Positions 11,491 to 17,132 of a DNA stretch of 64,000 nucleotides are shown piece by piece; within the stretch, counting starts at the first letter, position 1; the number at the start of each line of letters is the position of its first letter. Both the position numbers and the translations under genes were made by a program. Under the pieces are notes generated by a model that saw only the letters and a list, made by a program, of their open reading frames with translations, had not been told where the DNA came from and made no database searches. Source of the DNA: Obrimoposthia wandeli (Eukaryota); contig CDROCS010003739.1 of the NCBI GenBank assembly GCA_977020255.1, positions 62,001 through 126,000 of the forward strand, read 5' to 3'.

Positions 11491-12036
11491 ATGACAATCA
11501 GCGATCAGAATCTTATTTGGGTTGATTTAGAGATGACTGGCTTAGATCCAGAGATCCATCAAATCATTGAAATCGCAACTATCGTGACCGATGCTCAATT
11601 GAATATTTTAGCCGAAGGTCCAGTTTTAGCTATTCATCAGTCTGAAGCTGAATTAGCTAAAATGGATGATTGGTGCACAAATACACATACCAACAGTGGC
11701 TTGGTTGAGCGCATTCGTCAAAGTACGTTTACGGAAGAAGATGCGATCCGACAGACTATTGCGTTTTTAGAGCAATGGGTACCAAAAGGTGCATCGCCTA
11801 TTTGTGGCAACAGTATTGGTCAAGATCGTCGTTTCTTATATAAGCATATGCCTGAGCTAGAGCAGTACTTTCATTACCGCTATCTAGATGTAAGCACGAT
11901 TAAAGAGTTAACACGACGCTGGCAACCAGAGCTACTTGACGGCTTTTCTAAAAAGGGCAGCCATCTAGCGCTTGATGATATTTATGATTCAATCGCTGAG
12001 CTGCGCTACTATCGTGAGCATATTTTCACTATTTGA
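11491..12036 (+). CDS. orn: Oligoribonuclease
   Basis: [21 protein letters not shown] and H-x-ALDDI DEDDh motifs; divergent from rsgA. Confidence 0.96.
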
Positions 12037-12086
12037 TGGTAAAATAAGCACTTGAAGAAAAATGTGCGGATTTTTATTTAGATCTA

Positions 12087-12122
12087 TTGCATCCGTCATT
12101 TTTCCTCGTATAATGCGCAGCC
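12087..12122 (+). promoter_or_regulatory. Stable-RNA-type sigma70 promoter of the tRNA operon
   Basis: TTGCAT(12087-92)-N16-TATAAT(12109-14), then GC-rich discriminator GCGCAGCC, with an A/T tract upstream; rrn P1-like architecture. Confidence 0.8.
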
Positions 12123-12165: not shown

Positions 12166-12182
12166 CGCGGGATGGAGCAGTT

Positions 12183-12216
<34 letters not shown>

Positions 12217-12242
12217 TGGTTCAAATCCAGCTCCCGCAACCA
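12166..12242 (+). tRNA. tRNA-fMet (CAT), copy 1
   Basis: 77 nt, C1xA72 mismatch, GGG/CCC anticodon stem, encoded CCA. Confidence 0.97.
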
Positions 12243-12265
12243 ACTTACTTGATATGTTCAAGTAT

Positions 12266-12341
12266 GCGACACTAGCTCAGCTGGTAGAGCGCAACCTTGC
12301 CAAGGTTGAGGTCACGAGTTCGAGCCTCGTGTGTCGCTCCA
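12266..12341 (+). tRNA. tRNA-Gly (GCC), copy 1
   Basis: 76-nt cloverleaf, CAACC-TTGCCAA-GGTTG, U73, CCA. Confidence 0.97.
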
Positions 12342-12424
12342 CTCTTTCTTATGAAAGAGCGTTTCATTGCTCAGGCGATGAAGCAAAAGTTGTTATCGTA
12401 CTTAACGGTGAGATATAAATCGGA

Positions 12425-12441
12425 CGCGGGATGGAGCAGTT

Positions 12442-12475
<34 letters not shown>

Positions 12476-12501
12476 TGGTTCAAATCCAGCTCCCGCAACC
12501 A
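12425..12501 (+). tRNA. tRNA-fMet (CAT), copy 2
   Basis: Identical to copy 1. Confidence 0.97.
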
Positions 12502-12532
12502 ATTTACTTGTTGAGAGACAAGGACCAGAGAT

Positions 12533-12608
12533 GCGACACTAGCTCAGCTGGTAGAGCGCAACCTTGCCAAGGTTGAGGTCACGAGTTCGAGCCTCGTGTG
12601 TCGCTCCA
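12533..12608 (+). tRNA. tRNA-Gly (GCC), copy 2
   Basis: Identical to copy 1. Confidence 0.97.
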
Positions 12609-12678
12609 AATTGATGTCATAGCGATAAGCTGTGAGATGATAGTTGTTACCGTACTTTAACGGTGAATATAAATCGGA

Positions 12679-12695
12679 CGCGGGATGGAGCAGTT

Positions 12696-12729
<34 letters not shown>

Positions 12730-12755
12730 TGGTTCAAATCCAGCTCTCGCAACCA
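12679..12755 (+). tRNA. tRNA-fMet (CAT), copy 3, G5.U68 variant
   Basis: Single C>T at 12747 turns an acceptor-stem G-C pair into G.U; otherwise intact. Confidence 0.93.
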
Positions 12756-12786
12756 ATTTACTTGTTGAGAGACAAGGACCAGAGAT

Positions 12787-12860
12787 GCGACACTAGCTCA
12801 GCTGGTAGAGCGCAACCTTTGCTGTTGAGGTCACGAGTTCGAGCCTCGTGTGTCGCTCCA
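12787..12860 (+). pseudogene. Degenerate tRNA-Gly, copy 3 (anticodon arm 2 nt short, GCC lost)
   Basis: CAACCTTGCCAAGGTTG is replaced by CAACCTTTGCTGTTG; 74 nt. Confidence 0.8.
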
Positions 12861-12930
12861 AATTGATGTCATAGCGATAAGCTGTGAGATGATAGTTGTT
12901 ACCGTACTTTAACGGTGAATATAAATCGGA

Positions 12931-12947
12931 CGCGGGATGGAGCAGTT

Positions 12948-12981
<34 letters not shown>

Positions 12982-13007
12982 TGGTTCAAATCCAGCTCCC
13001 GCAACCA
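12931..13007 (+). tRNA. tRNA-fMet (CAT), copy 4
   Basis: Identical to copy 1. Confidence 0.97.
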
Positions 13008-13038
13008 ATTTACTTGTTGAGAGACAAGAACCAGAAAT

Positions 13039-13114
13039 GCGACACTAGCTTAGCTGGTAAAGCTCAAGCTTTGCAAAGTTCAGGTTGCGCGCTCGAGCCT
13101 CGTGTGTCGCTCCA
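13039..13114 (+). pseudogene. Degenerate tRNA-Gly, copy 4 (12 substitutions, nominal anticodon TGC)
   Basis: Substitutions at tRNA positions 13, 22, 26, 30, 34, 35, 39, 43, 48, 49, 52, 54; acceptor stem and CCA intact. Confidence 0.8.
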
Positions 13115-13183
13115 AATTGATGTCATAGCGATAGCTGTGAGATGATAGTTGTTACCGTACTTTAACGGTGAATATAAATCGGA

Positions 13184-13200
13184 CGCGGGATGGAGCAGTT

Positions 13201-13234
<34 letters not shown>

Positions 13235-13260
13235 TGGTTCAAATCCAGCTCCCGCAACCA
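13184..13260 (+). tRNA. tRNA-fMet (CAT), copy 5
   Basis: Identical to copy 1. Confidence 0.97.
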
Positions 13261-13291
13261 ATTTACTTGTTGAGAGACAAGGACCAGAGAT

Positions 13292-13367
13292 GCGACACTA
13301 GCTCAGCTGGTAGAGCGCAACCTTGCCAAGGTTGAGGTCACGAGTTCGAGCCTCGTGTGTCGCTCCA
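13292..13367 (+). tRNA. tRNA-Gly (GCC), copy 5
   Basis: Intact, identical to copy 1. Confidence 0.97.
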
Positions 13368-13436
13368 AATTGATGTCATAGCGATAGCTGTGAGATGATA
13401 GTTGTTACCGTACTTTAACGGTGAATATAAATCGGA

Positions 13437-13453
13437 CGCGGGATGGAGCAGTT

Positions 13454-13487
<34 letters not shown>

Positions 13488-13513
13488 TGGTTCAAATCCA
13501 GCTCCCGCAACCA
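13437..13513 (+). tRNA. tRNA-fMet (CAT), copy 6
   Basis: Identical to copy 1. Confidence 0.97.
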
Positions 13514-13544
13514 ATTTACTTGTTGAGAGGCAAGAACCAGAGAT

Positions 13545-13619
13545 GCGACACTAGCTCAGCTGGTAGAGCGCAACCTTACCAGGTTGAGGTCACGAGTTCG
13601 AGCCTCGTGTGTCGCTCCA
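13545..13619 (+). pseudogene. Variant tRNA-Gly, copy 6 (6-nt anticodon loop TTACCA)
   Basis: CAACC-TTACCA-GGTTG: G34>A plus loss of one A; 75 nt. Confidence 0.75.
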
Positions 13620-13689
13620 AATTGATGTCATAGCGATAAGCTGTGAGATGATAGTTGTTACCGTACTTTAACGGTGAATATAAATCGGA

Positions 13690-13706
13690 CGCGGGATGGA
13701 GCAGTT

Positions 13707-13740
<34 letters not shown>

Positions 13741-13766
13741 TGGTTCAAATCCAGCTCCCGCAACCA
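13690..13766 (+). tRNA. tRNA-fMet (CAT), copy 7
   Basis: Identical to copy 1. Confidence 0.97.
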
Positions 13767-13797
13767 ATTTACTTGTTGAGAGGCAAGGACCAGAGAT

Positions 13798-13873
13798 GCG
13801 ACACTAGCTCAGCTGGTAGAGCGCAACCTTGCCAAGGTTGAGGTCACGAGTTCGAGCCTCGTGTGTCGCTCCA
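13798..13873 (+). tRNA. tRNA-Gly (GCC), copy 7
   Basis: Intact. Confidence 0.97.
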
Positions 13874-13943
13874 AATTGATGTCATAGCGATAAGCTGTGA
13901 GATGATAGTTGTTACCGTACTTTAACGGTGAATATAAATCGGA

Positions 13944-13960
13944 CGCGGGATGGAGCAGTT

Positions 13961-13994
<34 letters not shown>

Positions 13995-14020
13995 TGGTTC
14001 AAATCCAGCTCCCGCAACCA
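13944..14020 (+). tRNA. tRNA-fMet (CAT), copy 8
   Basis: Identical to copy 1. Confidence 0.97.
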
Positions 14021-14051
14021 ATTTACTTGTTGAGAGGCAAGAACCAGAAAT

Positions 14052-14127
14052 GCGACACTAGCTCAGCTGGTAGAGCGCAACCTTGCCAAGGTTGAGGTCA
14101 CGAGTTCGAGCCTCGTGTGTCGCTCCA
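14052..14127 (+). tRNA. tRNA-Gly (GCC), copy 8
   Basis: Intact. Confidence 0.97.
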
Positions 14128-14197
14128 AATTGATGTCATAGCGATAAGCTGTGAGATGATAGTTGTTACCGTACTTTAACGGTGAATATAAATCGGA

Positions 14198-14214
14198 CGC
14201 GGGATGGAGCAGTT

Positions 14215-14248
<34 letters not shown>

Positions 14249-14274
14249 TGGTTCAAATCCAGCTCCCGCAACCA
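14198..14274 (+). tRNA. tRNA-fMet (CAT), copy 9
   Basis: Identical to copy 1. Confidence 0.97.
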
Positions 14275-14305
14275 ATTTACTTGTTGAGAGACAAGGACCA
14301 GAGAT

Positions 14306-14381
14306 GCGACACTAGCTCAGCTGGTAGAGCGCAACCTTGCCAAGGTTGAGGTCACGAGTTCGAGCCTCGTGTGTCGCTCCA
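14306..14381 (+). tRNA. tRNA-Gly (GCC), copy 9
   Basis: Intact. Confidence 0.97.
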
Positions 14382-14451
14382 AATTGATGTCATAGCGATA
14401 AGCTGTGAGATGATAGTTGTTACCGTACTTTAACGGTGAATATAAATCGGA

Positions 14452-14468
14452 CGCGGGATGGAGCAGTT

Positions 14469-14502
<34 letters not shown>

Positions 14503-14528
14503 TGGTTCAAATCCAGCTCCCGCAACCA
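14452..14528 (+). tRNA. tRNA-fMet (CAT), copy 10
   Basis: Identical to copy 1. Confidence 0.97.
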
Positions 14529-14559
14529 ATTTACTTGTTGAGAGACAAGGACCAGAGAT

Positions 14560-14635
14560 GCGACACTAGCTCAGCTGGTAGAGCGCAACCTTGCCAAGGT
14601 TGAGGTCACGAGTTCGAGCCTCGTGTGTCGCTCCA
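14560..14635 (+). tRNA. tRNA-Gly (GCC), copy 10
   Basis: Intact. Confidence 0.97.
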
Positions 14636-14693
14636 AATTGATAGGTTATTGCTCTTGCAGTGATGACCGGAAGGTGAAAAACTTCCATGTGAT

Positions 14694-14769
14694 GCGACAC
14701 TAGCTCAGCTGGTAGAGCGCAACCTTGCCAAGGTTGAGGTCACGAGTTCGAGCCTCGTGTGTCGCTCCA
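14694..14769 (+). tRNA. tRNA-Gly (GCC), copy 11 (Gly-Gly doublet breaking the alternation)
   Basis: Intact; flanked by unique spacers. Confidence 0.97.
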
Positions 14770-14831
14770 AATTCTTCTTCTTCGGAAGAGATAAGTTTTC
14801 ATCGTACTTTGAACGGTGAGTATAAATCGGA

Positions 14832-14848
14832 CGCGGGATGGAGCAGTT

Positions 14849-14882
<34 letters not shown>

Positions 14883-14908
14883 TGGTTCAAATCCAGCTCC
14901 CGCAACCA
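14832..14908 (+). tRNA. tRNA-fMet (CAT), copy 11
   Basis: Identical to copy 1. Confidence 0.97.
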
Positions 14909-14939
14909 ATTTACTTGTTGAGAGACAAGGACCAGAAAT

Positions 14940-15029
14940 GCGACACTAGCTCAGCTGGTAGAGCGCAACCTTGCCAAGGTTGAGGTCACGCCAGTTCCTT
15001 GAAGATCAGGAGCCTCGTGTGTCGCTCCA
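14940..15029 (+). pseudogene. tRNA-Gly, copy 12, with +14 nt in the T arm
   Basis: ACG-AGTTCG-AGCC is replaced by ACG-CCAGTTCCTTGAAGATCAGG-AGCC; 90 nt; GCC anticodon intact. Confidence 0.8.
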
Positions 15030-15099
15030 AATTGATGTCATAGCGATAAGTTGTGAGATGATAGTTGTTACCGTACTTTAACGGTGAATATAAATCGGA

Positions 15100-15116
15100 C
15101 GCGGGATGGAGCAGTT

Positions 15117-15150
<34 letters not shown>

Positions 15151-15176
15151 TGGTTCAAATCCAGCTCCCGCAACCA
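15100..15176 (+). tRNA. tRNA-fMet (CAT), copy 12
   Basis: Identical to copy 1. Confidence 0.97.
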
Positions 15177-15383
15177 ATTTACTTGTTGAGAGACAAGACA
15201 TGCAATACTCATATAATGAGTTAAGCATACCTACTACTGGGAAGTAGTAGCACAATGTAGCATTCCTGGATTTATCGATTACCGACAATCTAGTGTGTTG
15301 CCTCAAAGCGCTTTTAAACATTGGTTTAAAAGACCATAGGAAGCAATCAGCTTCAATACATCATCTTAGTTTCTATATCAGCA

Positions 15384-15408
15384 CAGCCTCTATGAGGTTG
15401 GTTTTTTT
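15384..15408 (+). terminator. Terminator of the tRNA operon
   Basis: cagcctc-tat-gaggttg followed by gttttttt. Confidence 0.7.
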
Positions 15409-15611
15409 ATCTGATAAAAAGCAAATAAGATGCGCTGTAGTCACCAATCCTGTGAAGCATTGGTATCAAAATACGGTATAAGCCTTTCATAGCATCGCTA
15501 TACTAAAGAGTTTGTAATACGTATCGGCTCTCATTTATCCAGATCATAAAGCAGTATGGAAACCTATGTTTTCAGGCTTTATACCCTTATTGTTAAGTGA
15601 AAAGTAGCGCT

Positions 15612-15955
15612 TAATTCACAGAGTTATCCACAAAAAATAATCTGTGGGTAAGTCAGTTGATTACATGTGCTGATGCAGTGTGAATAACTCTATATCCCCC
15701 CTTGATTCCCCTTTTTTTTTAATTATCCACAAACTGATTATTAACAGGCTAACATACTGTTTTATATGGTCTAGTTGCCAGTTTTATTACACTTATATAC
15801 AGCTTGATCAGTATGCTTATTTATGGGGTTAATAGACTGAATTTTTTATCCACCACCTGTGTTTAATATTTAAGAAGCAGGTAGGAAAGAGAAGTGTTGA
15901 AAATGTTTTCCACATTCACTAAGAATGTAGGCTACCTCTCATTTTGTGTGTATAA
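15612..15955. promoter_or_regulatory. datA: DnaA-box cluster, datA-like locus
   Basis: Perfect TTWTNCACA at 15624(+), 15679(-), 15723(+), 15906(+), 15947(-); one-mismatch boxes at 15612, 15643(-), 15793, 15846. Lies between the tRNA-Gly(GCC) cluster and the queG 3' end, as E. coli datA does. Confidence 0.75.
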
Positions 15956-15998: not shown

Positions 15999-17132
15999 CT
16001 AAGCGTCTCGTGGAAGACCTTTCTCGACAATGCGAACTAACCTTTTCGTGTTTGATGGTAGTACATCAATCGCATTCTTGGCGTATTTGTTATGTTGCTT
16101 TTTGATTGCCCACTGAATATGTATATCGAGTATCTTATTAAGGGCTAATCGACTGTTTAACGCTTCAAGAATGTCTTCGTTATAAGGTGCGTTACCCATT
16201 GCTATCGCGATGTTTCGTAGCCATTGGATATGACCGATACGACGAATAGCTGAGCCTTCAGTATTCTTTAGGAATGTTGCTTCATTCCATAAAAATAGTG
16301 TTGTTAAGTCTTGTTGATACAAGTTGTCTCGGCAGTGATAATCCGTTTCTTGCGTGATTTCACCGTTGCGGCTAAATGGGCAGACTAACTGACAATCATC
16401 ACAACCGTATATACGGTTTCCTATCTTCTCTCTTAATTCCTCTGGTATTACACCATCAAATTCAATCGTTAAATAAGAAATACAGCGTCGTGCATCGACA
16501 ATACCTTCTTCAATAATGGCGCCGGTTGGGCAGCTTGTTATGCAGGCAACACATTTACCACATTGGTTCTCTTGAGGTGTATCGACGGGAAGTGGCAGAT
16601 CAATTAGCAATTCGCCAAGAAAGAACCAAGAGCCACTATCACTGTTTAGAATCAATGAATGTTTCCCCGTCCAGCCTAGTCCTGCTTTTTCAGCTAATGG
16701 GCGCTCTAGAATGGGGGCAGAGTCTACAAACGGGCGATACCCAAATTGACCTACTTCCTTTTCGATTCGTTGACCAAGCTGTTTAAGGCGATTACGAATG
16801 AGCTTGTGATAATCGCGCCCTAAAGAGTAACGACTAATATAAGCTTTAAGCGGTTGTTTAAGTGTTTGAGCAAATCCAGCCTCAGGAGGCAGGTAATTCA
16901 TTCTTACACTGATCACGCGAACGGTATTTGGCAGTAATTCAGCTGGGCGGGCACGCATCATACCGTGGCGTGCCATCCAATCCATCTCACCGTGGTATCC
17001 TGCATCTAGCCAGCGTTGTAGCTGGGCTTCATGTTTTTGCAGATCAACATCGCAGATCCCGACTTCTTGGAATCCTAGCTCTTTTCCCCATAGCTTTATT
17101 TGCTGAGTGAGTGCGGTGTAATCAATGCTCAT
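15999..17132 (-). CDS. queG: Epoxyqueuosine reductase
   Basis: YSLGRDYHK, FVDSAPILER, CGKCVACITSCPTGA and YGCDDCQLVCP 4Fe-4S motifs. Confidence 0.95.
   Translation of the reverse strand: MSIDYTALTQQIKLWGKELGFQEVGICDVDLQKHEAQLQRWLDAGYHGEMDWMARHGMMRARPAELLPNTVRVISVRMNYLPPEAGFAQTLKQPLKAYISRYSLGRDYHKLIRNRLKQLGQRIEKEVGQFGYRPFVDSAPILERPLAEKAGLGWTGKHSLILNSDSGSWFFLGELLIDLPLPVDTPQENQCGKCVACITSCPTGAIIEEGIVDARRCISYLTIEFDGVIPEELREKIGNRIYGCDDCQLVCPFSRNGEITQETDYHCRDNLYQQDLTTLFLWNEATFLKNTEGSAIRRIGHIQWLRNIAIAMGNAPYNEDILEALNSRLALNKILDIHIQWAIKKQHNKYAKNAIDVLPSNTKRLVRIVEKGLPRDA

What the first reader, a model, noticed from the sequence alone, without database searches (positions are those of the whole stretch)
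12166..15176. Very large tandem amplification of an initiator-tRNA/tRNA-Gly cassette
Seen: 12 tRNA-fMet and 12 tRNA-Gly(GCC) genes in one operon under a single stringent-type promoter. Known: the syntenic E. coli locus (orn-glyVXY-queG) has three Gly tRNAs and no fMet, and E. coli has four initiator tRNA genes in total. Inference: an expandable and contractible gene-dosage device for translation-initiation capacity, probably origin-proximal. Copy number may vary between strains or even within a culture.
Basis: partly seen in the sequence, partly recalled or inferred. Interest (0 to 1): 0.7.

Follow-up and report, generated by a model that had tools for sequence, protein, structure and literature searches.

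The report
Record-size initiator-tRNA/tRNA-Gly tandem array
A Photobacterium chromosome carries 12 initiator-tRNA genes alternating with 12 glycine-tRNA genes (8 intact, 4 damaged) in one tandem operon; this is the largest example I found of an array that all Vibrionaceae have at this spot, so it is a known kind of feature, not a new one.

Summary
Window 12166-15176 (+) holds 12 initiator tRNA-fMet genes; 11 are identical and one has a benign G:U change. It also holds 12 tRNA-Gly(GCC)-derived genes. Only 8 of these are intact. Three carry private anticodon-arm or multi-site lesions, and one is a 90-nt copy with an expanded T-arm.

The contig is a Photobacterium of the profundum/frigidiphilum group. 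Gene order (psd-rsgA-orn-array-queG-nnr-tsaE-amiB) matches E. coli orn-glyVXY-queG.

An alternating fMet/Gly array after orn occurs across Vibrio, Aliivibrio and Photobacterium with variable copy number. P. profundum SS9 has 7 fMet, 5 Gly and the same T-arm variant. Published work already names P. profundum and Vibrio as record holders for initiator tRNA genes.

Twelve in one array is the largest I saw. This scan also noted the Gly lesions on this same stretch (s1-217685).

An rrnB-P1-like promoter, covarying processing hairpins and one terminator fit a single operon. The locus lies about 280-310 kb from dnaA in relatives.

Copy-number change between species is shown. Change within a culture is not.

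The side finding worth follow-up is the T-arm-expanded tRNA-Gly-like gene, present in 37 of 67 Photobacterium genomes.

The parts
11491..12036 (+). orn (oligoribonuclease), upstream flank
   Evidence: NCBIfam NF003765, E 3e-89. 98% identical to P. frigidiphilum Orn.
12066..12086 (+). A+T-rich stretch directly upstream of the -35 hexamer, possibly an UP element (inferred)
   Evidence: Read from the sequence. Conserved in SS9, P. frigidiphilum and P. sagamiensis leaders.
12087..12121 (+). Operon promoter: -35 TTGCAT (12087-12092), 16-bp spacer, -10 TATAAT (12109-12114), GC-rich discriminator GCGCAGC
   Evidence: Read from the sequence. Conserved in four species. The layout resembles E. coli rrnB P1 (own knowledge). 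The consensus scan did not list it because the -35 matches only 3 of 6 positions.
12166..12242 (+). tRNA-fMet copy 1
12266..12341 (+). tRNA-Gly(GCC) copy 1, intact
12425..12501 (+). tRNA-fMet copy 2
12533..12608 (+). tRNA-Gly(GCC) copy 2, intact
12649..12664 (+). Hairpin ACCGT-loop-ACGGT, 14 nt before the fMet 5' end. It recurs before every internal fMet gene and is a likely processing signal.
   Evidence: Conserved position with compensatory changes across Photobacterium, Vibrio and Aliivibrio.
12679..12755 (+). tRNA-fMet copy 3 (C69T, giving a G4:U69 wobble)
12787..12860 (+). tRNA-Gly-derived pseudogene, 74 nt, with a rewritten anticodon loop
   Evidence: Unique to this contig.
12931..13007 (+). 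tRNA-fMet copy 4
13039..13114 (+). tRNA-Gly-derived pseudogene with 13 substitutions, a broken anticodon stem and T54 changed to C
   Evidence: Rfam 32.1 bits against 65.7 for intact copies. Not called by ARAGORN. Alignment. Unique to this contig.
13184..13260 (+). tRNA-fMet copy 5
13292..13367 (+). tRNA-Gly(GCC) copy, intact
13437..13513 (+). tRNA-fMet copy 6
13545..13619 (+). tRNA-Gly-derived pseudogene, 75 nt, with G34A plus a 1-nt deletion that leaves a 6-nt anticodon loop
   Evidence: Unique to this contig.
13690..13766 (+). tRNA-fMet copy 7
13798..13873 (+). tRNA-Gly(GCC) copy, intact
13944..14020 (+). tRNA-fMet copy 8
14052..14127 (+). tRNA-Gly(GCC) copy, intact
14198..14274 (+). tRNA-fMet copy 9
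14306..14381 (+). tRNA-Gly(GCC) copy, intact
14452..14528 (+). tRNA-fMet copy 10
14560..14635 (+). tRNA-Gly(GCC) copy, intact (first of a Gly-Gly doublet)
14694..14769 (+). tRNA-Gly(GCC) copy, intact (second of the doublet, with its own 58- and 62-nt spacers)
14832..14908 (+). tRNA-fMet copy 11
14940..15029 (+). T-arm-expanded tRNA-Gly(GCC)-like gene, 90 nt. It sits at the same penultimate position as in P. profundum SS9 and P. sagamiensis.
   Evidence: Below the Rfam tRNA threshold.
15100..15176 (+). tRNA-fMet copy 12 (last gene of the array)
15177..15383 (+). Conserved 3' trailer with two conserved hairpins
   Evidence: Alignment of 11 Photobacterium loci and consensus fold. No Rfam match. 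An RNA-run contig covers 15168-15471 while orn has none.
15384..15410 (+). Intrinsic terminator (7-bp stem followed by a T run), the likely operon end
   Evidence: Its position is conserved in relatives.
15999..17132 (-). queG (epoxyqueuosine reductase), downstream flank
   Evidence: NCBIfam TIGR00276, E 4e-146.

Best explanation
This is the Vibrionaceae version of the orn-linked tRNA-Gly operon. In this family, initiator tRNA-fMet genes alternate with tRNA-Gly(GCC) genes in a tandem array. In this Photobacterium the array has grown to 12 fMet plus 12 Gly-derived genes through repeated unequal recombination of a ~254-bp fMet-Gly unit. It is most likely transcribed as one polycistronic precursor. 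Transcription would start at an rrnB-P1-like, growth-rate or stringently controlled promoter upstream of the first gene. It would run to an intrinsic terminator about 210 nt after the last gene. The precursor would be cut into tRNAs with the help of a conserved hairpin in front of each fMet gene. The array runs in the same direction as replication and lies in the origin-proximal tenth of chromosome 1. Its effect is high and growth-coupled supply of initiator tRNA (at least 13 genes, counting a metY-like copy elsewhere) and of tRNA-Gly(GCC). Shown here: the anatomy, the synteny, the family-wide occurrence, copy-number differences between species, and exchange among units. Inferred: promoter use, co-transcription, and the dosage benefit, which could serve fast growth or growth in the cold.
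For: Anatomy. Initiator identity: C1xA72 mismatch, three G:C pairs in the anticodon stem and A11:U24 (read), and 93.5% full-length identity to the E. coli gene present at a median of 4 places per genome. Synteny. Family-wide arrays after orn in Photobacterium, Vibrio and Aliivibrio; 28 gap-free arrays have medians of 3 fMet and 4 Gly, with maxima of 7 and 9. Complete Photobacterium genomes: SS9 has 7 fMet + 5 Gly + 1 variant, G047 has 9+9, G067 has 8+11. Flanks are ~95% identical to SS9 while the copy number differs. SS9 lacks the distinctive first unit that this window shares with P. sagamiensis. Three biallelic spacer sites give 6 haplotypes among 10 units, which means exchange between units. 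The promoter is conserved in four species. The hairpin before fMet covaries across genera, whereas the TATAAA next to it is not conserved outside Photobacterium. RNA-run contigs span Gly-to-fMet and fMet-to-Gly spacers and the trailer but not orn. Terminator. Distance to dnaA in three complete relatives is 275-310 kb. GC skew is positive across the window. Literature: P. profundum had the most tRNA-fMet genes (8) of 234 genomes (PMC1635315). Vibrio has very high initiator tRNA copy numbers, linked to fast growth (PMC5143459). In E. coli the initiator tRNA level follows gene copy number, and loss of metZWV gives cold sensitivity (PMC3017606). Losing initiator copies is harmful in rich medium and helpful in poor medium (Samhita 2014, as summarised in PMC9981150).
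Against: No reads span the array, so the exact count of 12 rests on one assembly, and that assembly is a mixed 1.35-Gb collection with at least 18 full-scoring dnaA matches. Promoter use and co-transcription are not shown by stranded raw reads; the RNA evidence consists of contigs from another sample with a related strain. Each Photobacterium unit also carries a weak promoter-like TTGTTA-18-TATAAA, so some internal initiation is not excluded. The dosage benefit has not been tested in any Vibrionaceae.
Confidence: 0.8

Rival explanations
1. The assembly over-expanded the array or stitched together strain variants. The real array would be closer to the 7 fMet units of P. profundum SS9, and the odd Gly lesions would be polishing or strain-mixing errors.
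For: The source assembly is a mixture of many bacteria. k-mer contigs of the best-matching run break at both array edges. The three private Gly lesions were found nowhere else: not in 67 Photobacterium genomes, JGI metagenome contigs or the rest of this assembly.
Against: Eleven of the 12 fMet-bearing units carry distinguishing markers, namely spacer SNP haplotypes, a 69/70-nt spacer length difference, lesions, the Gly-Gly doublet, and unique first and last units. Over-expansion of a collapsed repeat gives identical copies. Flanking genes are intact. Flanks match the best run with 0 differences at about 14x depth. Complete relatives have arrays of 13-19 genes. In that run the exact fMet 41-mer unitig has about 22 times the flank depth; this is consistent with many copies but is not a copy number.
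Confidence: 0.1
2. The array is not one operon. Each 254-bp unit would have its own promoter (TTGTTA-18-TATAAA just upstream of each fMet gene), so that output scales with copy number independently of the upstream promoter.
For: The motif is present in every internal Photobacterium unit and is conserved among Photobacterium species.
Against: The -10-like TATAAA is replaced by unrelated sequence in Vibrio and Aliivibrio. What is conserved there is a hairpin with compensatory changes, which is an RNA-level signal. A start 7 nt after TATAAA would fall inside the tRNA. RNA contigs span the spacers. The consensus scan lists no promoter inside the array.
Confidence: 0.12
3. One reading: the array is a dynamic dosage device whose copy number changes within a strain or culture in response to temperature, pressure or nutrients.
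For: Long, near-identical direct repeats (97-100% identical over 254 bp) are good substrates for RecA-dependent gain and loss. Units show past exchange. Sister species differ by 5 units. Tandem amplification of initiator tRNA genes under selection is reported for Salmonella (Nilsson et al. 2006; the title is cited in PMC11721125, the details are from my own knowledge). E. coli genomes range from 1 to 8 initiator places.
Against: No population data are available here. The single short joint in one run (12246 to 15095, 20-nt side) is of the kind the tool itself warns against. Persisting unit-specific markers and an ancient edge variant at the same position in three species show that turnover is slow enough for units to diverge.
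Confidence: 0.15
4. The array is a horizontally acquired or phage-derived tRNA island.
For: None beyond its repetitive nature.
Against: It sits in conserved core-gene synteny shared with E. coli. It is present at the same site across three genera. There are no mobility genes in the flanks.
Confidence: 0.01

Closest known systems
P. profundum SS9 orn-linked fMet/Gly array (chromosome 1, ~3.8086-3.8102 Mb)
   Same: Same locus, same promoter leader, same 254-bp unit and identical fMet and Gly genes. The same 90-nt T-arm variant sits at the penultimate position, followed by the same trailer and terminator. Its 8 tRNA-fMet genes were reported as the maximum among 234 genomes (PMC1635315).
   Different: SS9 has 7 fMet, 5 intact Gly and 1 variant; this window has 12 fMet, 8 intact Gly and 4 damaged Gly. 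SS9 lacks the distinctive first unit and the Gly-Gly doublet, and it has none of the three private Gly lesions.
E. coli orn-glyVXY-queG operon
   Same: Orthologous position and flanking genes, with tandem tRNA-Gly(GCC) genes.
   Different: E. coli has three Gly genes and no initiator tRNA at this locus. Its initiator genes lie elsewhere, at metZWV and metY (own knowledge); a median of 4 places per genome match.
E. coli/Salmonella metZWV tandem initiator tRNA genes and their selected amplification
   Same: These are tandem initiator tRNA genes whose number sets the initiator tRNA level (PMC3017606). They can be amplified by unequal recombination when more initiator is needed (Nilsson et al. 2006, cited in PMC11721125; details from own knowledge).
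   Different: They are homogeneous fMet repeats without interleaved Gly genes, at a different locus. Their amplification is a laboratory response to selection, whereas here a large array is fixed in the lineage.
Multi-copy tRNA and rRNA redundancy linked to fast growth
   Same: High copy number, a growth-rate-controlled promoter, an origin-proximal position and co-orientation with replication. Redundancy is beneficial in rich medium and costly in poor medium (PMC9981150).
   Different: This is a general principle rather than a specific system, and it was not tested for this organism.

Membership tests
Bacterial initiator tRNA (tRNA-fMet) | Mismatch at positions 1 and 72 (C1 x A72) | tested here: met
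   All 12 copies begin with C and have A at position 72 (sequence).
Bacterial initiator tRNA (tRNA-fMet) | Three consecutive G:C pairs in the anticodon stem (29-31:39-41) and a CAU anticodon | tested here: met
   GGG and CCC flank the loop CTCATAA in all 12 copies.
Bacterial initiator tRNA (tRNA-fMet) | Close sequence relationship to experimentally defined initiator tRNA genes | tested here: met
   93.5% identity over all 77 nt to the E. coli tRNA-Met genes present at a median of 4 places per genome.
Bacterial initiator tRNA (tRNA-fMet) | Formylation by Fmt and use in the ribosomal P site | not testable with these tools
   This requires biochemistry.
tRNA-Gly(GCC), glyV type | Cloverleaf with GCC anticodon, 7-nt anticodon loop, intact T-arm and encoded CCA | tested here: met
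   Met by 8 copies at 65.7 bits each. Not met by the copies at 12787, 13039, 13545 and 14940.
Vibrionaceae orn-linked fMet/Gly tandem array | Located between orn and queG on the same strand as orn | tested here: met
   relatives.
Vibrionaceae orn-linked fMet/Gly tandem array | Alternating tRNA-fMet and tRNA-Gly(GCC) genes in tandem | tested here: met
   The same pattern occurs in 40+ related loci.
Stringent or growth-rate-controlled promoter of the rrn P1 type | Near-consensus -10, 16-bp spacer and a GC-rich discriminator after the -10 | tested here: met
   TTGCAT-16-TATAAT-GCGCAGC at 12087-12121, conserved in four species.
Stringent or growth-rate-controlled promoter of the rrn P1 type | Down-regulation by ppGpp/DksA and dependence on growth rate | not testable with these tools
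   This requires reporter or in vitro transcription assays.
Dynamic gene duplication-amplification locus | Copy-number heterogeneity within a clonal population | tested here: inconclusive
   Only k-mer contigs were available, and they collapse at the array.

The most novel reading that the evidence does not exclude
The 90-nt copy at 14940-15029 may not be a dead gene. It could belong to a conserved class of T-arm-expanded tRNA-Gly(GCC)-like RNAs. These keep the acceptor stem, the discriminator base and the GCC anticodon, which are the GlyRS identity elements. They replace the T-loop with a 14-15-nt insert holding a small covarying hairpin (CUYGA-AGA-UCRGG). Such an RNA could be charged but would fit EF-Tu and the ribosome poorly. 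It might act as a non-ribosomal glycyl donor, a decoy, or a tRNA-derived regulatory RNA. The class occurs in 37 of 67 Photobacterium species genomes, often in tandem, at the distal end of Gly-containing tRNA operons, and at the same array position in three species.
Probability: 0.25. Interest if true: 0.6.

Novelty: new member of a known kind. Interest (0 to 1): 0.3.

Why it matters
Initiator tRNA supply limits translation initiation. In E. coli it affects growth rate, initiation fidelity and cold tolerance. A cold- and deep-sea-clade Photobacterium with at least 13 initiator genes extends the known range; the published maximum was 8, in its sister species. The pair of 7-unit and 12-unit arrays in near-identical flanks gives a natural system for testing whether initiator dosage is adaptive at low temperature or high pressure. 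There is also a practical lesson. Many short-read drafts break at this array, so initiator tRNA counts from draft genomes are underestimates. The T-arm-expanded tRNA-Gly-like genes are the only part that may be new biology.

Tried and rejected
(1) Read laying on four runs. All were k-mer contigs. They stop at the first tRNA and resume at the last, so they give no copy number, no check of the lesions and no transcription starts. The one joint (12246 to 15095) has a 20-nt side and was disregarded.

(2) The look-up of encoding contigs for the exact Orn protein, to find same-species strains.

(3) Searches for the anticodon-loop lesions: the gap pattern for the 12787 and 13545 lesions in JGI metagenome contigs, in 67 Photobacterium genomes and in the rest of this assembly, and a separate pattern for the 13039 lesion in this assembly only. 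Nothing was found outside this contig, so the lesions remain unconfirmed by independent data.

(4) Internal promoters in each unit. I considered this because of TTGTTA-18-TATAAA, and judged it unlikely after cross-genus comparison showed a covarying hairpin instead.

(5) Family-wide count of fMet genes in 251 Vibrionaceae genomes. Only 3 candidates per genome were scored, so it says nothing about maxima.

(6) A test of whether lesions hit Gly genes preferentially. Four of four lesions in Gly gives p of about 0.05. One of them is ancestral, leaving three events (p of about 0.11-0.125), which is not significant.

(7) Rfam at a permissive threshold on the trailer: no match.

(8) The hypothesised GYTCC/GGARC inner stem in the T-arm variant. 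I rejected it because C:A combinations are common. The smaller CUYGA/UCRGG hairpin fits better.

(9) Nilsson 2006 and Samhita 2014 could not be read because they are not held. They are cited only through papers that cite them.

(10) The distance to oriC on the window's own contig could not be measured, because no dnaA lies on C3739.

Full report
**What is there.** ARAGORN finds 23 tRNA genes between 12166 and 15176, all on the + strand. The Rfam tRNA model also finds 23. It adds a weak one at 13039-13111 (32 bits) and misses the long copy at 14940. Tandem Repeats Finder reports a 254-bp unit, 8.9 copies, 97% matches.

Reading the sequence gives 12 copies of a 77-nt tRNA with anticodon CAU. Eleven are identical. 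The copy at 12679 has C69T, which changes the G4:C69 pair to a G:U wobble. There are also 12 copies derived from a 76-nt tRNA-Gly(GCC). All copies encode CCA.

**The CAU tRNA is the initiator.** It has the C1xA72 mismatch, three G:C pairs closing the anticodon stem, and A11:U24. It is 93.5% identical over its full length to the E. coli tRNA-Met genes that occur at a median of four places per genome.

**The correction to the observation.** Only 8 Gly copies are intact, and these are identical to each other. Four are not intact:
- 12787-12860 has lost two bases, and its anticodon loop is rewritten.
- 13039-13114 has 13 substitutions. They break the anticodon stem and change T54.
- 13545-13619 has G34A plus a one-base deletion, leaving a 6-nt anticodon loop.
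- 14940-15029 is 90 nt long because 14 nt are added in the T-arm.

The first three lesions occur nowhere else I could look. I searched 67 Photobacterium species genomes, JGI metagenome contigs and the rest of this assembly. They are therefore either recent private mutations or assembly errors. I confirm the pattern, but with three independent events it is not statistically significant.

**Whose DNA it is.** The 'own genome' handle is a 1.35-Gb mixed assembly with at least 18 full-scoring dnaA matches. Orn encoded at 11491-12036 is 98% identical to that of Photobacterium frigidiphilum. The flanks are about 95% identical in DNA to P. frigidiphilum and to a complete genome whose chromosome 1 has 4,085,304 bp. 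I take that genome to be P. profundum SS9, from my own knowledge of that length and from its 8 initiator genes.

The flanking genes are psd, rsgA and orn on one side and queG, nnr, tsaE and amiB on the other. This is the same order as in E. coli MG1655, where three tRNA-Gly genes (glyV, glyX, glyY) and no initiator gene lie between orn and queG.

**Why it is not unusual for its family.** I scanned 48 of the 80 loci recovered with Orn for tRNA genes; nearly all carry tRNA-fMet and/or tRNA-Gly(GCC) genes directly after orn, alternating wherever the contig continues. Photobacterium arrays start with fMet; Vibrio and Aliivibrio arrays start with Gly.
- Among 28 arrays without assembly gaps the medians are 3 fMet and 4 Gly, and the maxima are 7 and 9.
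- Many draft contigs simply end inside the array.
- In complete Photobacterium genomes the array holds 7 fMet + 5 Gly + 1 long variant (SS9), 9 + 9, and 8 + 11.
- Among 67 Photobacterium species genomes the highest total of initiator genes found was 10 (at most 13 candidates were scored per genome).

The literature already records this. P. profundum had the most tRNA-fMet genes (8) of 234 bacterial genomes (PMC1635315). Very high initiator tRNA copy numbers in Vibrio have been linked to fast growth (PMC5143459). With 12 in the array, plus a 100% identical metY-like copy next to tRNA-Leu on another contig, this organism has at least 13. That is the largest number I saw, but it is the same kind of thing.

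**Evidence that the array grows and shrinks.**
- SS9 and this window share the promoter leader, the unit, the trailer and ~95% identical flanks, yet they differ by five units.
- This window keeps a distinctive first unit (23-nt and 83-nt spacers) that is also present in the more distant P. sagamiensis but missing from SS9. It also has a Gly-Gly doublet with its own spacers.
- Three biallelic sites in the 31-nt fMet-to-Gly spacer occur in six of eight possible combinations among ten units. This requires exchange between units.

These findings support expansion and contraction by ordinary unequal recombination on evolutionary time scales. Nothing here bears on variation within a culture.

**Is the copy number an assembly artefact?** The public runs that hold this sequence are stored as k-mer contigs. 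In the best one, the flanks match with no differences at about 14x depth, and the contigs stop at the first fMet gene and resume at the last. I could not count units from reads.

Against over-expansion, eleven of the twelve fMet-bearing units can be told apart by their own markers. Complete relatives also carry arrays of 13-19 genes. I put about 10% on a materially wrong count.

**How it is probably expressed.** Upstream of the first gene lies TTGCAT, a 16-bp spacer, TATAAT and the discriminator GCGCAGC (12087-12121), preceded by an A+T-rich stretch. This layout resembles E. coli rrnB P1 (own knowledge), and it is conserved in four Photobacterium species. The consensus scan did not list it because its -35 matches only three positions.

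The same scan finds no promoter inside the array. It finds a terminator at 15384-15410, 208 nt after the last gene.

Each internal unit has TTGTTA-18-TATAAA just before the fMet gene, which could be read as a promoter. Across genera, however, the TATAAA is not conserved. What is conserved is a short hairpin 8-14 nt upstream of the fMet 5' end, with compensatory changes (ACCGT/ACGGT, CATTG/CAATG, CATCAT/ATGATG). That points to an RNA processing signal in a polycistronic precursor.

Contigs from a fish-associated metatranscriptome span Gly-to-fMet and fMet-to-Gly spacers and the trailer but not orn. This is consistent with co-transcription. However, these are contigs from a related strain in another sample, so the evidence is only suggestive.

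**Position.** In three complete Photobacterium chromosomes the array lies 275-310 kb from dnaA, which is 7-9% of the chromosome. It is on the strand that is co-directional with replication there. The window has positive GC skew throughout, with the array on the + strand. 'Origin-proximal' is therefore supported by relatives. It could not be measured on the window's own contig.

**Function.** In E. coli, initiator tRNA level follows gene copy number, and removing metZWV causes slower growth and cold sensitivity (PMC3017606). Losing copies is harmful in rich medium and helpful in poor medium (Samhita et al. 2014, as summarised in PMC9981150).

By inference, a large array under a growth-rate-controlled promoter near the origin gives high, growth-coupled initiator supply. 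A benefit in the cold for this psychrophile/piezophile clade is plausible but untested.

With 12 fMet genes against 8 intact Gly genes, the array now favours the initiator, the reverse of the family median. This fits selection acting on fMet dosage, with Gly copies free to decay. The numbers are too small to prove it.

**The side finding.** The 90-nt copy at 14940-15029 is not a private lesion. The same kind of gene sits at the same penultimate position in SS9 and P. sagamiensis. A pattern specific for its T-arm insert matches 37 of 67 Photobacterium species genomes, with no hit for the reversed control.
- It is often in tandem: ten copies in one genome, and 4.6 copies on another contig of this assembly. 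There, each copy is followed by a terminator, after a Cys-Gly-Leu-Gly operon.
- It also appears in loci of Vibrio chagasii and a Vibrionaceae MAG.
- The insert has an invariant core. A five-pair hairpin within it shows U:A, U:G and C:G at one pair, with two exceptions among 49 distinct sequences.
- The acceptor stem and the GCC anticodon are mostly kept, while other tRNA positions drift.
- An RNA contig from another sample shows an initiator tRNA with a 14-nt insert at the same T-loop place, beginning with the same seven letters.

I found no paper on this and no Rfam family. It may be an old pseudogene lineage carried along at array edges, or it may be a functional tRNA-like RNA. I give the latter about one chance in four.

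**Other observations.**
- The 3' trailer (15177-15383) carries two hairpins conserved across Photobacterium, one with compensatory changes, and has no Rfam match.
- An earlier report of this scan (s1-217579) places a datA-like DnaA-box cluster just downstream at 15612-15955. I did not test it.

**Verdict.** This is a real array, but the Gly count needs correcting. It is an ordinary feature of Vibrionaceae that happens to be at record size here.

Noticed in passing
window 14940-15029; L081 2441-3100 (G000:C1674); L083, L002, L018, L037, L040, L075, L080: T-arm-expanded tRNA-Gly(GCC)-like genes of 90-91 nt. They have a conserved insert core and a small covarying hairpin. They are present in 37 of 67 Photobacterium species genomes, often in tandem at the distal end of Gly-containing tRNA operons. 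There is no Rfam family and I found no paper.
   Followed up: partly
window 15177-15410: Conserved ~230-nt 3' trailer of the tRNA operon, with two hairpins conserved across Photobacterium and an intrinsic terminator. RNA contigs of a fish metatranscriptome cover it. There is no Rfam match even at E=1. It may be an RNA derived from the 3' external transcribed spacer.
   Followed up: partly
window 12649-12664 and the same place in every internal unit: Hairpin 8-14 nt upstream of each internal fMet gene, with compensatory changes across Photobacterium, Vibrio and Aliivibrio. It is a likely precursor-processing signal.
   Followed up: partly
loose end at window 12483 in RNA run X15: A contig from another sample carries an initiator tRNA whose T-loop is replaced by a 20-nt stretch, a net gain of 14 nt. 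The stretch begins CCAGTTC, the same start and the same net size as the Gly T-arm insert.
   Followed up: no
window 12787-12860, 13039-13114, 13545-13619: Three private lesions in Gly copies. Two of them share a TTTGC motif in place of TTGCC in the anticodon loop. The copy at 13039 has a compensated D-stem change (C13T with G22A) among its 13 substitutions. The same G34A change appears in a truncated variant copy on another contig (L081 3037).
   Followed up: partly
G000 as a whole: The 'own genome' is a 1.35-Gb mixture in 6912 contigs, with at least 18 full-scoring dnaA matches. Several other bacterial contigs in it (C506, C253, C5871, C4570, C6304) also carry tandem initiator tRNA arrays of 4-7 copies.
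   Followed up: no
L001, L003-L011, L013, L016, L017 and other draft loci: Short-read draft assemblies of Vibrionaceae very often end within a few hundred bases after orn, inside this array. Initiator tRNA counts from drafts are therefore underestimates.
   Followed up: no
E. coli complete genomes: Places matching the initiator tRNA range from 1 to 8 per genome (median 4) across 5426 complete E. coli genomes, so initiator copy number varies within that species too.
   Followed up: no
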